Origin: Ascidiella aspersa
Taxonomy: Eukaryota
Length of the DNA: 64,000 nucleotides
NCBI GenBank assembly: GCA_963924565.1
Contig: OZ004608.1
Coordinates: 32,860,001 to 32,924,000 of the forward strand
Direction of reading: 5' to 3'
Below the pieces are notes generated by a model. It saw only the letters and a list, made by a program, of their open reading frames with translations, was not told where the DNA came from and did not search any database. Shown one piece after another: positions 2,993 to 10,544 of the stretch; the first letter of the stretch is position 1, and each line of letters starts with the position of its first letter. The position numbers and the translations under genes were made by a program.

Positions 2993-3862
2993 AAATGGAA
3001 TTGCATAGCAAGGAATAGTTTCCAGGTATGTTATGACACCCCAGTTGGTTGAATTTTGCCTTATTCAAAAACTGCCAAACCAGCCGACATTTTATGTCAT
3101 AGATTTTGTTTGAAATTACGTCTAATCTAGACTAAAAGTTAAAAACATAGTGAACTTAATACAAACCGGATTTTCTTGATAAATTTTGGTAAAAAATACT
3201 TTTAATAAAAAATTAAAAAATTAAAATTCATGAAAGTTAAATTGTAATTGTGGTATATTTCTTGACTGATTCATGTGTTAATCATCGTTTTGCTGTAATT
3301 CTTGACGTTACATTTGGTAATTTCCCGCATAAATATTGGCAATTCCCTTATTCAGAATTTCTGTTCTGTCACGCTGCTGTGTAAAATTTTAAAAGTTATT
3401 ATATTCCAATAGTATCTTAACGAATATGTTGTATAAAACACCTATAAAATCAATTAAACTTTACTTATTAATCGTGTACTATTCAGCGTTCTCTCTGCAT
3501 TTATGATTTCATACCACTTGGCACTTTATGCATTACGCCTAACAGTGTTGCAAATTGACTTAAGTCGTGATGACTTTGCTTGACATGGTCTTAAAGTCGT
3601 TGGGTCAAATGACTTGGGTTAAAATTTATTTTTTTATTTATACAAATGAAGTATAAACTGTCTAACATTTTTGTGTGCGATTCACTAAGCTAGACATAAA
3701 TTGTCTTAAAAGCATGACGGGTGTGCCACATGCCGACTGGGCCAGGGACAGTTTATAGAAAGTTTTATTTGTGATAATGTAGGCTAACTACTTTTAAAAC
3801 ACTTGGGTGAATGGTATAAGCACCATCTAACTGTTACTTCTCAAGTTTTAGGATTTGTAGAG

Positions 3863-5728
3863 ATGTCAGATACAGAAACTGTGAACCCAACACCTGCAGA
3901 AGATGTGGCGACGAAACGTAAACAGGAGGAGCCTGAAGTCGATTCGGCCCCTCTCGTCAAAAAGAAAAAAGCAAGGGTGATGCCATATGAGCACATGTAC
4001 CTGGACAAGATGCCTTGCACCAATCACTACGAGAAAAGCTACATGCACCGCGACACAATCACCCACATTTCGTGCACTAAAACTGACTTCCTCATTACGG
4101 CAAGCTGTGACGGACACATAAAGTTCTGGAAAAAACAAGAGCTCGGCATTGAATTTGTCAAGCACTTTCGGGCACATTTGGGCCCTGTGACGTGCATGTC
4201 AACCAGCTACAACGGTGAGCTTATGAGCACCGTGTCAGTAGACAAAGCATTGAAGGTGTTTGACATCGTCAATTTTGACATGATTAATATGATTAACTTG
4301 GGATTTACGCCGAGCGTTTCCGAGTGGATTTATTCGCCCGGGAGCCGGATTGCCACCGTGGCTGTTGCTGAGAGAGACAGCAGCAAGATTTATGTCTATG
4401 ACGGCAGGGGAGGTTCAGAAGCGATGCACGTTATCGAGGGCATACACACAGATGTCGTCATTTGCATGTGCTACAACTCGGTGTACAAAATCGGCGTTTC
4501 TGCCGATAAAAAGGGCATGTTGGAGTATTGGGGCGGCCAAGAGCACGACTTTGTGTTTCCGAAAGGTGTGGTTAACTTTAAATTTAAAACCGACACCGAC
4601 CTTTATGAGTTGATCAAGTGCAACACCTACGCTATGACGATTGCCTTTTCACCTGACGGCAAGTTAATGGCCTGTACCTCGATGGACAGACATGTCAGGG
4701 TCTTTCATTTTCTCAGCGGCAAGAAGTCAAGGGTGTTTAAGGAGACCCTGGATGTAGTTGTCGAACTGCAGCAGACCAAGTCGCTGCTTCCCAACATGGA
4801 GTTTGGGCGTCGGCTTGCCGCCGAGCGCGAGTTGGAGAAATCCCTTGATAACTTTGCGCTGTGCAATTGCATCTTTGATGAAAGTGGTCAGTTTCTATTG
4901 TACGCCACCATGCTGGGTGTGAAGGTGATAAACCTGACGACCAACAGATGTGTTAGGTTTATTGGAAAACCGGAAAATATAAGGTTCCTCAACATCTCCA
5001 TGTTCCAGGGGTTCGGCGCCAAAACCAAGGCGACGCTAACGGCCGATATGCAAGCTTCGAACAACCCAGGCCTACAAGAAACAATCCTAGACCCCACTTT
5101 GTTTGCCACAGGCTTTAAAAAGAACCGCTTCTACCTGTTTTCACGGCGAGACCCCGATGATGCGGTGAACGCAAACACAGACAGGGATATCTTCAACGAA
5201 AGGCCAACCAAAGAGGAGGTGATGTCAGCCACACAGACACAAAATGAGAGGAAAACTTCCGAGACTGCAGTGATGCATACCGCAATGGGCGACATCCATT
5301 TGAAGCTGTTTGCGACTGAGTGTCCAAAAACTACTGAAAACTTTTGCGTTCACTCCAGGAACGGATATTACAATGGGCACATTTTTCACCGGATTATCAA
5401 GGGCTTCATGATTCAGACTGGAGACCCACTGGGTACCGGAACCGGCGGTGAAAGCATTTGGGGCGGAGAATTTGAGGATGAGTTTCACCCTAATCTCCGC
5501 CATGACCGACCCTACACGTTAAGTATGGCCAACGCTGGGCCGAACACTAATGGTTCGCAGTTTTTTATAACTGTTGTTCCCACCCCTTGGCTGGACAACA
5601 AACATACAGTGTTCGGCAGAGTTACAAAGGGCATGGAAGTGGTTCACAGCATTGCCACTACAAAAGTACACCCTAAAACTGACAAGCCATATGACGACAT
5701 TACAATTATTAGCATTAGCATAAAATAA
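3863..5728 (+). CDS. PPWD1: Peptidylprolyl isomerase domain and WD repeat-containing protein 1 (spliceosomal cyclophilin), single coding exon, 621 aa
   Basis: WD40 region ([52 protein letters not shown]) followed by a complete cyclophilin domain ([58 protein letters not shown]). The ORF-track start at 3803 is a TTG; the first ATG is 3863. Confidence 0.97.
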
Positions 5729-6206
5729 AAAAATAAGGCATTATGTTCAATGTTTTGTAATGCCTGTTTCAATGAAGTTTCCTTTTTAAATACTGTTAGA
5801 ACTTCTATCTGTAAGAAAAACGCTAAGGTATATTTTTTTATCTACCTACTTGTCAGTAACAAAAGTTGTTTAAAATGTGTATATCAAATTCATTCTTTTT
5901 CTAGAAATTTGAAATGAAAAAAATAGTAGATCAATTGCATTTTTTGTAGCTCTTTTCTCTCAGAACGCTGGGCTATTTTTATATCTACTTTACTTTGGCA
6001 ACTGACAAAGTTGTTCAAAATGTGTTTTTTTCTTCCAGTTTTGCTTGTAATTTGCCAAACCGAAACAAATTTTAAATCAATTATTCTTGTGTTTTTTTCT
6101 GCTTGTAGCATAGACAAATAGAAATTAGGAACAGAGCTAGGAGTAAAGTAGTCAACAATTGACATGATGCTAGGATAGAGTAAATACAATTGAAAGTTCA
6201 AACAGA

Positions 6207-7659
6207 ATGGATTGTGCTGAAGAGCAAGCTGATGAGTTTGAGGCGCTCGCTTCTATCTTTATGGAGGATTTTTCAGACCTAGCAACTGTTCCCGCCTCCT
6301 GCATGATAGCAATCAAAGAAGTAGACTCAGATTTTGCAAACACTGTCTTCCAGTTAAAATTCACACTGCCTGGGGATTACCCTGGGACTGTACCTTGCAT
6401 TCAGTTTCCATTGAGAAGTGGTGCTTTCAAACCTGACCTGAAGCCAAATTTACTTCACTACTTAAAAGAAGTTGCAAGTGATAACCAAGGTCTTCCTTCG
6501 ATTTTCACGATAACGGAGGCGGCCAAGGATTGGTTAAAAGAAAACTTAAAATCTTATTGTGTCAACACAACTTCTAACTTTGATCCAAAAGTTGAGGAAA
6601 AGGGTTCTCAGGCAAGAGAAGAAAGACATATAGAGGCTCAAATTGAAGAAAACGTGAAGGATGAAACGGCGTCCTCGCAGGGCAAATGGGACTTTGTTAT
6701 CGGCCTGGTTGGAAAGCCGTCGGCTGGAAAAAGCACTTTCTTTAACGCGGCCACGAAAGGCACCAAGGCCAAAGTGGGCGCCCACCCCTTCACAACGATC
6801 GACCCCAATTTCGCCCAGGCCTTCTACACCATTCCAGACCCGGGGTCAAAATTGGGCGTGGTTTCGGCGCCTGCTTACGGGAAGCCAAACAACTTGGAGA
6901 GATATGTTCCAGTGCTGCTCAAAGACGTTGCCGGTCTCGTACCTGGAGCGTCCGACGGCAAAGGCAGAGGCAATCGCTTCCTTAACGATTTATGCGACGC
7001 TGATGTGCTCATACACGTGGTGGACGCCTCTGGGAAGACCGACGCTTTCGGTGAACCGGCGCCCGAGGGTCACGACCCCGGGTATGACGTCACGTGGCTG
7101 CTGGACGAGATTCGCGCGTGGATTCACGGCAACTTGGCGCGACGCTGGGAAGCGATCGTAAAGCGTCCAGAACGCCTAGCGGACATGTTTAGCGGCTACC
7201 ACTGCTCGCCTAAGCTAGTACGGAGCGCTTTTGTCCGCGCTGGACTGTCAACTAGCAATCTGGCGGAAGAACTGCCTTCCTGGGGTGACGATGTGGTTCA
7301 TAGGCTTGTTTCTGCCTTTGTAGCTGTACGATTTCCGATACTTTTGCTGCTGAACAAGAGCGACGATCCGAGCTCGCGCGAAAACATCGCGAAGCTTTCC
7401 GAACGCTTCGCCGACTGGCCGCGAATTTGCGCGAGCGCCCGGGTCGAGTGCGAACTCCAGAAATCGCTCCAAGAAGGCCAGGTTCTCGAAGATTCGCTCG
7501 CGAAAAAGCGCGAAGAGCTTTCGGAAAAGTTCGGAGGAACCAACGTCCATCTGGCCTTAAATCGAGCGGTCGAACTGCGCGCGCCGACCTACGCCTTTCC
7601 GGTTCACGACCTTTCGACCTTGACCTCGCACGAGCCGCAGCAGAAAGGTCAAAGTTCAG
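6207..7659 (+). CDS. RWD domain-OBG family (YGR210C-like) GTPase fusion, exon 1
   Basis: RWD signature (EEQADEFEALASIF...LKFTLPGDYPGTVP...GLPSIFTITEAAKDWL), then G1 GKPSAGKS, G2 PFTTIDPN, G3 DVAG (LKDVAGLVPGASDGKGRGNRFLNDL), IHVVDASGKTD, G4 NKSD and G5 SA. Donor CAG|GTAATT at 7659/7660, phase 1. Confidence 0.9.
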
Positions 7660-8261
7660 GTAATTACATGCAATGAGCGACAAGGTTGAGCGTAAAAATG
7701 TATTGTGTCAAAAAGTGCCCCGGCTGCACAATGAAAATATAACATAAACTAACAGAATATAGTGTATATCAAGAAAAAGTCGAAATGCTGTGCTTGAAAA
7801 AACTTCATTACACATCGCTTTTCTTGACTTGAAAGTTCTGTTATTTAGGTACTACATCTCAAGGCAAAATTAACCCTTTCTGAATAAAAAGATTTAAGAA
7901 ACGCATTTGTTTTTAAACTTATAAAATGTGCTGCATTATTTGCGACATTTTAGCGCTATTACTTGCATTATCCAGCTATTCGCCTCGGCACTAAACGAAG
8001 CGACAAACTCGGTCGAAAACTTGCTTTTTTTGCCTTACACTTTTAAAACCGTTTTTGCAAAAACACACATATGCTTGCAAGTGTAATTGAAGAGTTTGCT
8101 GCGACGGCCTCGGCGTAAGGAGTCTCAGCAGGCCAACGACTGGGAATGTCTCTGCCTTGCCGTACTTGCATGATTATTTATATTAGATCAATCAATTCCC
8201 CTTGAATACACTCACACATAAAAAAAAACATTATTAACGTATTCTCTCGCATCCAACTTAG

Positions 8262-8473
8262 GCGTTCTGCGTGATTGCCTTGTGCTGAAACCTGGCACCA
8301 CCGTCCAGCACCTCCACACGCTCATGCGACATCACTACCGACTCGTCACCGGAGACTTTGTGAGGGCGGAGGCGCTCACAGGTCAGAGGGGACAGACACG
8401 CATCGTACGCAAGAATGACGTCATCAATAGGGAGAATTGCGTCATCAAGATCATGACGACTAAGCGGAGCTGA
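8262..8473 (+). CDS. RWD-OBG GTPase fusion, exon 2 (C-terminal TGS-like domain)
   Basis: Acceptor ccaacttag| at 8261. The phase-1 join reads G-VLRDCLVLKPGTTVQHL...GDFVRAEAL...VIKIMTTKRS*, resembling the TGS-like C-terminus of YGR210C-family GTPases. Spliced CDS is 1665 nt = 554 aa. Confidence 0.88.
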
Positions 8474-10544
8474 GCCGCGAGATGTGTTGTAGTCAATTAG
8501 TCGTCACTTCCGTTTAAAAAAGCGAGCAAACACCACAAGTTCGTATTGTAAGGTGTTTTCGTTTGGCTGGTGGTGTGCGTTTTGGTAAAGGTGGAGTGTA
8601 TTTATTGACCACAGGTTAATTCGTTTGACAGTTTTGGAAAACACTATGATGCGCGATTAGTATTGATAACGGCAATTAGTATCGATAAGGGAAATCTTGA
8701 TGAAAAATATGCGCTCACAATTCTGATCTGTTAGGATTGTAATTCTACCCTCACTGAAGTATGGATTGTCGGGACCGCTATTTCGATAGCGGTAAACCTT
8801 ATAGGTTAGATGTGTTCTTCACTCAGAACAAAAACGATAAAAAAGCGTCGTTAGTAGCTGATATTTAAAATTTATTTGGATAGCAACGTTTGCGATATTA
8901 TTTTTATTTAGTATTCTCTATATTTTAGTATGGTGTGCTAGTAAATGTTTGTTTAGTGTGCAATATTTTCGAAGCACTTTATTTCATATAATCGTGTTGC
9001 AATTCAAGCTATCGCGTTCTTTTATAATCTATCTATGTCGTTCCTAGGCTACATTTTTTTTTGCCAATATAAAAATAAAAAATATGGTGTGATATTGTTG
9101 TCGCTGTGTGGCGCTAGAGAGTCGTAGTTAGAACAACTATTCAAACTGTTTTCAAGACCAGAGGTTTTAGGAAGTTAATAAAACGTACGCACCGAAGGAG
9201 ATTTCCAGCTGGTTATAAAGATATATATGGTAAACAGGGCGAACTGACACCGACGTCTTAAAATTAGCCCTGAATTTTGCAACCCTTGCGTTAGTATTTA
9301 TTTGGCTTAAGTTTGCTGTGGTATTTCCAACGTTATGTTTGGTAGGAAACGTAGTCTACCTATCAAGTTAGAAAACTCAAAAGTTAAATCGCAAACAAGG
9401 TATAGTTATCGGATGTGGGCTTCGATCCGACTTGATCTAACACCCTTATACCTATAGCACATGCAATAAGGCAGTGTCTCTCAATCCATGGTTTGCGACC
9501 CGAAACAAGGCAGTCTGTCAATTTGGTTGGGTCCCCGACTGAAGTATTTCACGTGGTTAGATTTATTGAGATTTGTTTCGAGCAACATTTTTCTAAAAAT
9601 TAGGGAAATTAAGCAATAAATACGAAGTCATATAACCATTAATATTTAAACTAGAATTTATTTATGATATTTGTCTTATTTTTTATTCACTTAAAAAACG
9701 AATTAATTAAAAATAGCCCGTCACCACTGCAGGCATTTGTCAGCACTAACGTGATAAAATCAGCTAGCGTCCATTTTCACGCAATTATCGTATTGCAAAA
9801 AATGAATTAAGCCAATAAAGCTTTGCTATTACACTTACGCTTAGGATTTAGGTGATCGCGAAAAAGGGCTGAGAACTCTGCAATAAGGTATGTTCATCAT
9901 TCTAAAATATTATATTGAAAAGCCAGCGGAATCTCGCCTTGCCAGAGATCCGGAACTCTGGTTTAGTCATCACGTTCCACCGGAACCAGTATAGTAGAGC
10001 GTTTTATGATCAAGCAACGCATAACGAGTCACAACCTTTCCAGCGCCGGTGACGTGAGCTCAATTTTTTCGCGCCGGTGACGCGTAATGCTTACGTCACA
10101 CATTAATGAGCATTGTGACGCTGGCAATTAATCATCGCTTCTAAATTTAAAGCGTCGAAATAGCGTTGACGTTACTTTTCATAGCAAAAGGTTGTTCTAT
10201 ACAAAAGACCAATTACCGGATATTAATATCGCGTTTGCAAAACCGGAAGTTATTCGGCAAAAAACAACATCAAATGCCCAGACCCCAGACAACTGCAACA
10301 TTCAATGCCGAGTTCTACTAATAGAGCAGGTAGCCGGGTTACGAAACATTTGTAATTATAGCCTTGTCGGGAGTATTTATATCTCATTTGGGACGAAGTA
10401 GTTTGACTTGACTTTTTAGACAATCAATTCCTACTACCATCAATCACTTTTTTATTTTCGAAATTAAAATTTGTCTTGAGCTTAAGAATTTATTAAAGTC
10501 AATTTTATGTGAATCGCGGCGGGCAAGTTAAATCATCAATTCAA

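What the first reader, a model, noticed from the sequence alone, without database searches (positions are those of the whole stretch)
6207..8473. RWD domain fused to a YGR210C/archaeal-type OBG GTPase in an animal genome
Seen: one continuous reading frame joins a ~115-aa RWD domain, through a charged linker, to a complete GTPase (GKPSAGKS, PFTTIDPN, DVAG, NKSD). A TGS-like tail sits on a second exon that the ORF track lists separately. Known: the motifs DVAGLVPGA..G.G.GN.FL.DL, HVVD.SG.TD and DEIR.WI.GNL..RW match the Ygr210 subfamily of OBG GTPases. That subfamily is familiar from fungi and archaea as stand-alone proteins and is distinct from OLA1/YchF and DRG. RWD domains in GCN2, IMPACT/Yih1 and RWDD1/Gir2 bind GCN1, and RWDD1/Gir2 partners the OBG-family GTPase DRG2/Rbg2 on stalled ribosomes. 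Inference: this could be a Rosetta-stone fusion, a one-chain analogue of Gir2-Rbg2. It would link an uncharacterised GTPase family to GCN1-dependent ribosome stall/collision sensing.
Basis: partly seen in the sequence, partly recalled or inferred. Interest (0 to 1): 0.8.

Follow-up and report, generated by a model that had tools for sequence, protein, structure and literature searches.

The report
Sea-squirt RWD–Ygr210 GTPase fusion gene
This is a real two-exon sea-squirt gene that joins an RWD docking domain to a Ygr210-type GTPase; the same architecture is already annotated in many invertebrates and protists, nobody has tested what it does, and a role at stalled ribosomes is a reasonable guess only.

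Summary
ORF 6207-7676 (+) encodes an RWD domain (aa 5-110), an acidic linker and a complete Ygr210-type OBG GTPase. A second exon (8262-8473, phase 1, GT/AG) encodes the C-terminal beta-grasp tail and is 70% identical to the end of the Phallusia orthologue. The gene is single-copy. Twelve of 15 listed coding variants are synonymous, and sparse stranded RNA reads lie on the RWD/linker/P-loop and on exon 2.

The GTPase is not OLA1 or DRG. The best PDB match is P. horikoshii PH0525/1WXQ (314 bits by profile, against 80-92 for YchF/OLA1 and about 25 for Rbg2).

The architecture is not new. About 100 of the 120 best database relatives carry it, in ascidian, amphioxus, molluscs, annelid, nemertean and many protists and chytrids. 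Outside animals most also carry an N-terminal FSH1 serine hydrolase. A 2025 paper mentions the Chlamydomonas member in passing.

In my tree the RWD-bearing proteins form one clade, separate from yeast-type YGR210C.

The RWD is closest to RWDD1 and GCN2, which both bind GCN1. There is no DFRP domain, and GCN1 or ribosome binding is untested.

Verdict: an orthologue of a widespread, annotated, uncharacterised family. The Rosetta-stone idea is plausible but unproven. The scan's notes on this genome hold no earlier RWD finding.

The parts
6207..7659 (+). Exon 1 coding part (ATG 6207; 484 codons plus 1 nt): RWD, linker, G domain with helical insert and G4 region, and the first part of the C-terminal domain
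   Evidence: ORF; domains. The N-terminus aligns from residue 1 with the Phallusia and Branchiostoma proteins (99% query coverage).
6219..6536 (+). RWD domain (aa 5-110), with a YPxxxP motif (YPGTVP)
   Evidence: Pfam PF05773, E 7.6e-15; six-frame hit of 58.9 bits in the own genome. PDB sequence matches: RWDD1 2EBM and GCN2 2YZ0. With the family profile: RWDD1 77.8 bits, GCN2 57, RNF25 46.7, RWDD3 37, IMPACT 30.
6537..6692 (+). Acidic/charged linker (about aa 111-162)
   Evidence: Read directly from the sequence. The equivalent stretch of the orthologue model has pLDDT below 50 at residues 130-143.
6693..7575 (+). Ygr210-type OBG GTPase core. G1 6711-6734, G2 6786-6809, G3 6924-6935, helical insert, G4 NKSD 7353-7364.
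   Evidence: NCBIfam PRK09602, 222 bits, aa 164-455. 1WXQ 154 bits, aa 165-474. Pfam YGR210-like_G4 above its cut-off.
7660..8261 (+). Intron (602 nt, GT...AG, phase 1)
   Evidence: Sequence. The flanking translations are collinear with P0001. GC is 0.37 against 0.56 in the flanking coding sequence. No junction read was recovered.
8262..8473 (+). Exon 2 coding part with stop TGA 8471-8473: C-terminal beta-grasp (TGS-like) tail
   Evidence: 70% identity to P0001 residues 491-557. AF2 model of the exon-2 product: pLDDT 90.8. Only weak fold matches, all ubiquitin-like/beta-grasp folds including YchF C-terminal domains. RNA reads at 8382-8595. All 4 listed variants are synonymous.

Best explanation
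Shown: 6207-8473 (+) is an intact, single-copy, two-exon ascidian gene under purifying selection. Its product has four parts in order:
- an N-terminal RWD domain of the RWDD1/GCN2 type;
- a flexible acidic linker of about 50 residues;
- a GTP-specific (NKxD) OBG-family GTPase of the Ygr210/PH0525 type, with its helical insert;
- a C-terminal beta-grasp tail.
It is the orthologue of a widespread eukaryotic family. Outside animals, most members also carry an N-terminal FSH1 serine hydrolase.

Inferred mechanism: the RWD docks on the RWD-binding region of GCN1 on stalled or collided ribosomes, as the RWDs of GCN2, Gir2/RWDD1, Yih1/IMPACT and RNF14 do. [quoted passage not shown] A GTP cycle would control binding and release. 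While bound, the protein would also compete with the other RWD effectors for GCN1.

The covalent link would replace the DFRP-mediated pairing of Gir2 with Rbg2. My confidence in the anatomy and orthology is about 0.95. The figure below is for the whole statement, including the GCN1/ribosome mechanism.
For: - Anatomy.
- Single copy.
- Purifying selection: 12 of 15 listed coding variants among conspecific DNA runs are synonymous.
- Expression: stranded RNA reads at 6349-6883 and 8382-8595, in the same orientation as the upstream +-strand gene.
- No GTPase-only product: there is no in-frame ATG between codons 33 and about 326, so no AUG-started product can carry the P-loop without most of the RWD (sequence).
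- Family: the same Pfam architecture is found in about 100 of the 120 best relatives.
- GTPase type: 1WXQ 154 bits (single sequence) and 313.9 bits (profile), against YchF/OLA1 80-92 and Rbg2 25. The orthologue model has pLDDT 89.3. Foldseek gives TMt 0.81 to 1WXQ, 0.55-0.62 to YchF and 0.48 to Rbg1.
- RWD type: closest to RWDD1 (77.8 bits; TMt 0.76; 34% identity) and GCN2 (57 bits; TMt 0.74).
- Literature: GCN1's C-terminal region binds the RWDs of Gcn2, Gir2, Yih1 and RNF14 and sits next to the GTPase centre of the leading stalled ribosome, where Rbg2-Gir2 binds (PMC8040806; bioRxiv 10.1101/2022.03.21.485216).
Against: - There is no direct evidence that this protein or any family member binds GCN1 or ribosomes.
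- RWD domains also serve other partners, for example RWDD3 with Ubc9 and the kinetochore RWDs.
- There is no DFRP domain.
- The Ygr210 family has no known function, and its ribosome binding is assumed from relatives.
- The genome keeps separate DRG genes (two loci; the one read, L002, looks DRG2-like). The fusion is therefore an addition, not a replacement.
- The family has been lost from vertebrates and Arabidopsis, and from yeast in its fused form (PMC4263083 table; no such hits). A Chlamydomonas strain that lacks the gene is viable (PMC12711092). Any role is therefore dispensable.
- RNA support here is thin: 29 reads, no junction read and no reads on 6135-6348.
Confidence: 0.45

Rival explanations
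1. Same gene and protein, but the RWD does not bind GCN1. It serves another partner (an E2/UBL-type interaction as for RWDD3-Ubc9, or another scaffold), or it acts within the molecule to regulate the GTPase. In this reading the protein has no role in stall or collision sensing.
For: - RWD is a generic E2-like interaction fold. The profile also matches RNF25 and RWDD3.
- A weak UQ_con hit covers aa 33-68.
- pTM 0.82 for the whole orthologue model is compatible with a docked RWD.
Against: - The best sequence and fold matches are to the two best-documented GCN1 binders, RWDD1 and GCN2.
- Fusion to a translation-type OBG GTPase fits a ribosomal setting.
- The linker is predicted to be disordered, which suggests a tethered rather than a docked RWD.
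Confidence: 0.3
2. The protein works on ribosomes but outside stall surveillance, for example in subunit maturation or hibernation as several OBG/YchF-type factors do. The RWD would be only an adaptor to some ribosome-associated partner.
For: OBG-family relatives matched here include the biogenesis factors Obg, MTG2 and GTPBP10, and YchF bound to the 50S subunit.
Against: - Known RWDD1/GCN2-like RWDs act through GCN1 on translating ribosomes.
- No nucleolar or organellar targeting feature is evident at the N-terminus, which begins directly with the RWD.
Confidence: 0.2
3. The fusion is not real. It would be two neighbouring genes read through by chance, an assembly artefact, or a decaying pseudogene.
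For: - RNA coverage is sparse, and no junction read was recovered.
- There is a sharp step in GC3 and CpG content inside exon 1 at about 6660, between the RWD/linker and the GTPase part.
Against: - The frame is continuous, with no stop over 489 codons.
- Three conspecific DNA runs carry the same sequence across 6046-6676 or more (table 8).
- The architecture is conserved from ascidian to protists.
- Most coding variants are synonymous.
- RNA reads cross the RWD/linker/P-loop region at 6349-6883.
Confidence: 0.03

Closest known systems
Annotated but uncharacterised 'YGR210C-like / C428.15-like / RWD domain-containing' proteins of invertebrates (for example Phallusia mammillata A0A6F9DNE7, Branchiostoma, Crassostrea, Haliotis, Capitella)
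   Same: Same length (about 555-575 aa), same RWD + MMR_HSR1 + YGR210-like_G4 architecture and same C-terminal tail. Identity is 55% to Phallusia and 40-46% to the others over 94-99% of exon 1. The window protein is sister to Phallusia in the tree (100*).
   Different: Nothing structural. The window gene is simply the orthologue in a further ascidian whose proteins are not in the searched database.
FSH1-RWD-Ygr210 three-domain proteins of protists, chytrids and green algae (for example Chlamydomonas Cre12.g538200, Ichthyophonus, Plasmodiophora, Durusdinium)
   Same: Same RWD-bearing clade of the GTPase (99*). Same order of RWD, linker, GTPase and tail.
   Different: They carry an N-terminal FSH1 serine hydrolase with the GFSxG and H..GH..P motifs kept. 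The window protein starts at the RWD, and the upstream gene (PPWD1-like) ends 478 bp before it. A separate FSH1 gene lies elsewhere in the genome.
Gir2-Rbg2 (RWDD1-DRG2) heterodimer on GCN1-bound disomes
   Same: An RWDD1-like RWD combined with an OBG-family GTPase that has a C-terminal beta-grasp domain. This is the logic behind the Rosetta-stone reading (PMC8040806).
   Different: - The GTPase belongs to another subfamily. The Rbg2 and Rbg1 chains score 25.2 and 22.7 bits against the family profile, and Rbg1 has TMt 0.48 to the orthologue model. Pfam finds no DRG-type domain, though the HTH and S5D2L modules were not looked for one by one.
- There is no DFRP domain. The link is covalent, through a disordered linker.
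- The genome still has DRG genes.
- Binding to GCN1 is not shown.
Pyrococcus horikoshii PH0525 (PDB 1WXQ) and other archaeal Ygr210/PRK09602 GTPases
   Same: Best sequence and fold match over the whole G domain, helical insert and C-terminal domain. 30-35% identity to 80 archaeal loci, including Asgard lineages.
   Different: The archaeal proteins are stand-alone (about 390-405 aa). Their matches begin at residue about 150 of the orthologue, so they have no RWD.
Yeast YGR210C / S. pombe SPAC428.15 type stand-alone Ygr210
   Same: Same Pfam domains in the GTPase part, 39-42% identity.
   Different: No RWD. They fall outside the RWD clade, and an AU test rejects grouping them with the chytrid fused proteins (delta lnL 146, p 2e-41). 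This is a distinct lineage, not the orthologue.
YchF/OLA1
   Same: OBG-family P-loop, helical insert and C-terminal beta-grasp domain. It is the second-best structural match.
   Different: TIGR00092 scores 73.6 bits against a cut-off of 279. G4 is NKSD rather than the NxxE I recall for OLA1 (from memory). The genome has its own multi-exon OLA1 at C2:35175573-35180634.

Membership tests
Ygr210 subfamily of OBG GTPases (broad sense) | Complete G1-G4 motifs with an NKxD G4 | tested here: met
   GKPSAGKS, PFTTIDPN, DVAG and NKSD are read in the ORF. N and K of G4 are invariant and D is kept in at least 90% of 84 relatives.
Ygr210 subfamily of OBG GTPases (broad sense) | Pfam YGR210-like_G4 domain above the gathering score | tested here: met
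   37.9 bits against a cut-off of 24.7 on exon 1, where the domain is cut short by the exon end. The full domain scores 49-80 bits in orthologues.
Ygr210 subfamily of OBG GTPases (broad sense) | Closer to archaeal PRK09602/PH0525 than to YchF/OLA1, DRG or Obg | tested here: met
   PRK09602 222 bits against YchF 73.6 and Obg at most 61. 1WXQ 154/314 bits against YchF/OLA1 at most 92 and Rbg2 25. TMt 0.81 against at most 0.62.
Ygr210 subfamily of OBG GTPases (broad sense) | C-terminal TGS-type beta-grasp domain | tested here: inconclusive
   The family profile aligns to 1WXQ up to residue 394 of 397. The exon-2 model has pLDDT 90.8 but finds only weak beta-grasp matches (E at least 0.19), among them YchF C-terminal domains. 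Pfam TGS does not hit.
Orthologue of yeast YGR210C | Groups with yeast-type stand-alone proteins in a tree | tested here: not met
   The RWD-bearing proteins form a separate clade (99*). The AU test rejects chytrid-fused plus yeast-type proteins as one clade. This was a quick ML search, and I named the group after seeing the tree.
RWD domain | Pfam RWD above cut-off, YPxxxP motif and RWD fold | tested here: met
   55.5 bits against 22.8. YPGTVP is in the sequence. The orthologue model matches RWDD1 2EBM (TMt 0.76) and GCN2 7E2M (TMt 0.74).
DFRP family (Gir2/RWDD1, Tma46/ZC3H15) | DFRP domain that binds a DRG GTPase | tested here: not met
   No PF16543 hit at E<=0.1 in the window protein. None in ten relatives at E<=0.05.
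GCN1-binding RWD effectors (GCN2, IMPACT/Yih1, RWDD1/Gir2, RNF14) | Physical binding of the RWD to the GCN1 C-terminal RWD-binding region | not testable with these tools
   There is only similarity ranking (RWDD1 > GCN2 > RNF25 > RWDD3 > IMPACT). No complex modelling tool is available.
YchF/OLA1 | Reaches the YchF equivalog model cut-off, or has the YchF C-terminal domain | tested here: not met
   TIGR00092 scores 73.6 bits against 279.2. There is no PF06071 hit.
FSH1-RWD-Ygr210 three-domain proteins | N-terminal FSH1 serine hydrolase domain | tested here: not met
   The protein starts at the RWD, collinear with animal orthologues. No FSH1 lies in the 478-bp upstream spacer. The FSH1 hits in the genome are on other contigs.

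The most novel reading that the evidence does not exclude
The (FSH1-)RWD-Ygr210 proteins could be an ancient eukaryotic effector recruited by GCN1 to stalled ribosomes. It would have escaped study because vertebrates, insects, nematodes, land plants and budding/fission yeast lack the fused form. In the three-domain version, a catalytically intact serine hydrolase would be delivered next to the A/P-site tRNAs and could act on an ester-linked substrate there. Animals would keep a version without the hydrolase, acting as a GTP-gated sensor or competitor on GCN1.
Probability: 0.3. Interest if true: 0.75.

Novelty: new member of a known kind. Interest (0 to 1): 0.42.

Why it matters
GCN1 is now seen as a hub that hands stalled ribosomes to different RWD-domain effectors: GCN2, IMPACT, RWDD1-DRG2 and RNF14/RNF25. 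If it were confirmed, a conserved protein that joins such an RWD covalently to an uncharacterised OBG GTPase would add a further arm to that hub. In most non-animal lineages this protein also carries a hydrolase. It would also give the Ygr210-type GTPases their first functional setting.

The gene in this window adds little by itself. It is one more orthologue of an architecture that databases already display. The useful outcomes of this check are these:
- The family is broad and probably ancestral.
- It is distinct from yeast YGR210C.
- Its RWD is RWDD1/GCN2-like.
- A viable Chlamydomonas strain that lacks the gene already exists (lf5-2, PMC12711092).

Tried and rejected
- The exons were searched apart, and the natural full-length Phallusia orthologue P0001 stood in for structure prediction.
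I could not show that the roughly 1.9-kb Logan contigs encoding 557-aa relatives are cDNA.
I scanned ten representatives instead.
- Outgroup search: looking for true YchF in five archaeal genomes returned only their Ygr210-type gene. The own-genome OLA1 is multi-exon and was not joined. The tree therefore has only the own DRG2-like protein as a distant outgroup, on a very long branch, and its root is not reliable.
- RWDD1 orthologue: one weak DFRP_C hit in the own genome (27 bits) left RWDD1 unlocated. I make no claim on its presence.
- RNA: only about 6% of the one available RNA run was read. It gave 29 reads, no junction read and no reads on 6135-6348. The 5' end and the splice remain unconfirmed by RNA.
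- Exon-2-only model: it gave no significant PDB fold match.
- Rejected readings: gene-model artefact or pseudogene (continuous frame, conservation, synonymous-biased variants); membership of YchF/OLA1, DRG or DFRP (failed the tests above).
- Literature: searches for RWD+Ygr210, YGR210C, Ygr210, RWD+FSH1+GTPase and RWD+GCN1+Obg found no functional study of the family.
Full report
**Observation**

The window has a 489-codon ORF at 6207..7676 on the + strand.

Pfam finds three domains:
- RWD at aa 5-110 (E 7.6e-15);
- MMR_HSR1 at aa 165-276;
- YGR210-like_G4 at aa 382-425, above its gathering score.

NCBIfam's archaeal 'YchF-related putative GTPase' model PRK09602 scores 222 bits over aa 164-455. 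The true YchF model reaches only 73.6 bits.

The proposed splice is in the sequence. GT follows 7659, AG precedes 8262, the phase is 1, and the frame continues to the stop at 8471-8473. The translation of 8264-8470 is 70% identical to the last 67 residues of the Phallusia mammillata protein P0001. Homology therefore confirms the second exon.

All searches used exon 1 and exon 2 separately. The natural full-length orthologue P0001 served for whole-protein modelling.

**Is it a working gene?**

It is single-copy in the 308.6-Mb assembly.

Three DNA runs under the same species label carry the locus. Of the 15 best-supported coding differences among them, 12 are synonymous, including all four in exon 2. 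That is the pattern of purifying selection.

One RNA run of the same species label was laid, and only about 6% of it was read. It gave a few stranded reads at 6349-6883, which spans the end of the RWD, the linker and the P-loop, and at 8382-8595, which spans exon 2 and the 3' UTR. These reads have the same orientation as the reads of the upstream +-strand gene. No junction read was found, and no reads lay on 6135-6348. RNA support is therefore real but thin.

The sequence gives an independent argument. There is no in-frame ATG between codons 33 and about 326. No AUG-started product can therefore contain the P-loop without most of the RWD.

**What kind of GTPase is it?**

Against PDB sequences the best match is P. 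horikoshii PH0525 (1WXQ). It scores 154 bits with the single sequence and 313.9 bits with a profile of 84 relatives, aligned to residue 394 of 397. YchF/OLA1 reach 80-92 bits, and Rbg2 and Rbg1 reach 22-25 bits.

An AlphaFold2 model of P0001 built on that alignment has pLDDT 89.3 and pTM 0.82, with a disordered stretch in the linker at residues 130-143. Foldseek gives these TMt values:
- 1WXQ: 0.81;
- YchF/OLA1: 0.55-0.62;
- Rbg1: 0.48.

The same genome has a separate multi-exon OLA1 and two DRG loci, one of them an intronless DRG2-like ORF.

The tail is less clear. Pfam TGS does not hit it. A confident model of the exon-2 product alone (pLDDT 90.8) finds only weak matches, all to ubiquitin-like/beta-grasp folds, including the C-terminal domains of YchF. 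'TGS-like' is reasonable but not proven here.

**What kind of RWD is it?**

The single sequence matches RWDD1 (2EBM) best and then GCN2. The family profile ranks the RWD structures as follows:
- RWDD1: 77.8 bits;
- GCN2: 57 bits;
- RNF25: 46.7 bits;
- RWDD3: 37 bits;
- IMPACT: 30 bits.

The modelled RWD superposes on RWDD1 (TMt 0.76, 34% identity) and on GCN2 (TMt 0.74). No DFRP domain is present.

**How common is the architecture?**

It is very common. Among the 120 best relatives in the 5.8-billion-protein word search, 46 have the P-loop 60-260 residues from the N-terminus (RWD-type). This group includes an ascidian, three amphioxus species and one amphioxus hybrid, many molluscs, Capitella and Lineus. 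A further 54 have the P-loop at or beyond residue 260, with an added N-terminal FSH1 serine hydrolase. This group includes chytrids, Ichthyophonus, dinoflagellates, Plasmodiophora, stramenopiles and Diplonema. Fourteen are stand-alone. My own Pfam scan of ten representatives confirms these architectures.

In the three-domain proteins the hydrolase motifs are mostly kept. GFSxG is present in 46 of 54 and H..GH..P in 43 of 54, by a crude pattern count.

Eighty archaeal loci, including Asgard lineages, match only from residue about 150 onward. They have no RWD.

[quoted passage not shown] It also notes that the gene is deleted in the viable lf5-2 strain (PMC12711092).

A table in PMC4263083 lists no Ygr210 member for human, Arabidopsis, rice, C. 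merolae or E. coli. No vertebrate, arthropod or nematode protein is among the top 120 hits.

**Tree**

I ran a quick maximum-likelihood tree of 53 sequences, cut from the P-loop onward. It gives these results:
- All RWD-bearing proteins fall in one clade (SH-aLRT 99).
- The window protein is sister to Phallusia (100) inside an animal group.
- The archaea form one clade (100).
- The yeast-type stand-alone proteins lie outside the RWD clade.

An AU test rejects joining the chytrid fused proteins with the yeast-type proteins (delta lnL 146, p 2e-41). There are two caveats: I named that group after seeing the tree, and the only outgroup sits on a very long branch.

The FSH1 form occurs in an ichthyosporean, in chytrids and in several distant supergroups. 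The simplest reading is an old three-domain protein from which animals lost the hydrolase. That is an inference.

**Mechanism**

The literature establishes several points:
- GCN1's C-terminal region binds the RWDs of Gcn2, Gir2, Yih1 and RNF14.
- That region lies next to the GTPase centre of the leading stalled ribosome.
- Rbg2-Gir2 occupies the A-site region there, with Gir2's RWD reaching GCN1.

These points come from PMC8040806 and bioRxiv 10.1101/2022.03.21.485216.

The most likely working model is this. An RWDD1/GCN2-like RWD is tied by a disordered linker to an OBG-type GTPase. GCN1 recruits this GTPase to stalled ribosomes, and a covalent tether does the job that the DFRP domain does for Gir2-Rbg2.

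Each step of that model is inferred. No paper I could find characterises any Ygr210-type protein, and no tool here models complexes.

**Verdict**

The claim of an unusual animal fusion is not. This is the orthologue, in one more ascidian, of a widespread and database-annotated family that nobody has characterised. Earlier notes of this scan also take the genome for an ascidian, in agreement with the Phallusia best hit.

The Rosetta-stone hypothesis remains open and testable. It applies to the fused clade rather than to yeast YGR210C.

Noticed in passing
window 6207-8470: There is a sharp compositional step inside exon 1 at about 6660. The RWD and linker have GC 0.40-0.44, GC3 0.37-0.41 and CpG o/e 0.15-0.8. 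The GTPase part has GC 0.56-0.58, GC3 0.62-0.67 and CpG o/e 1.2-1.6. Exon 2 has GC3 0.71, and the intron has GC 0.37. Both halves look vertically inherited, so the cause is unexplained. Differential methylation or an internal CpG-rich element are possible.
   Followed up: partly
window 3803-5728 (+) and 5729-6206: The upstream neighbour is an intronless 641-codon PPWD1-like gene (WD40 repeats plus cyclophilin) on the same strand, ending 478 bp before the ATG. Its RNA reads run to about 6130. An AG sits at 6204-6205, directly before ATG 6207. This could be an ascidian operon with an SL trans-splice acceptor. I did not test it.
   Followed up: no
relatives P0039-P0119 (not in the window): Most non-animal members of the RWD clade carry an N-terminal FSH1 serine hydrolase with GFSxG and H..GH..P kept. 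This suggests an active esterase tethered to the RWD-GTPase.
   Followed up: partly
G000:C4:9063571-9064692 (L002), C2:17819943-17820494 (L003), C2:9834810-9835565 (L005), C5:5869767-5870360: Several genes fetched in passing are single uninterrupted ORFs in this genome: DRG2-like (373 codons), RWDD4-like (183), RWDD2-like (251) and an FSH1/OVCA2-like gene (215-aa open frame). PPWD1 is the same. The names come from my reading of the sequences, not from a search.
   Followed up: no
G000:C3:23253349-23254125 (L004): An RWD-encoding exon is followed by a Cys-rich exon. It looks like an RNF14-type RWD-RBR ligase, another candidate GCN1 effector in this genome. It was not verified.
   Followed up: no
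archaeal genomes G001-G005: In five archaeal genomes (Thermogladius, a Sulfolobaceae, Methanobacterium and two Heimdallarchaeota), the YchF model finds only the Ygr210-type gene and no true YchF.
   Followed up: no
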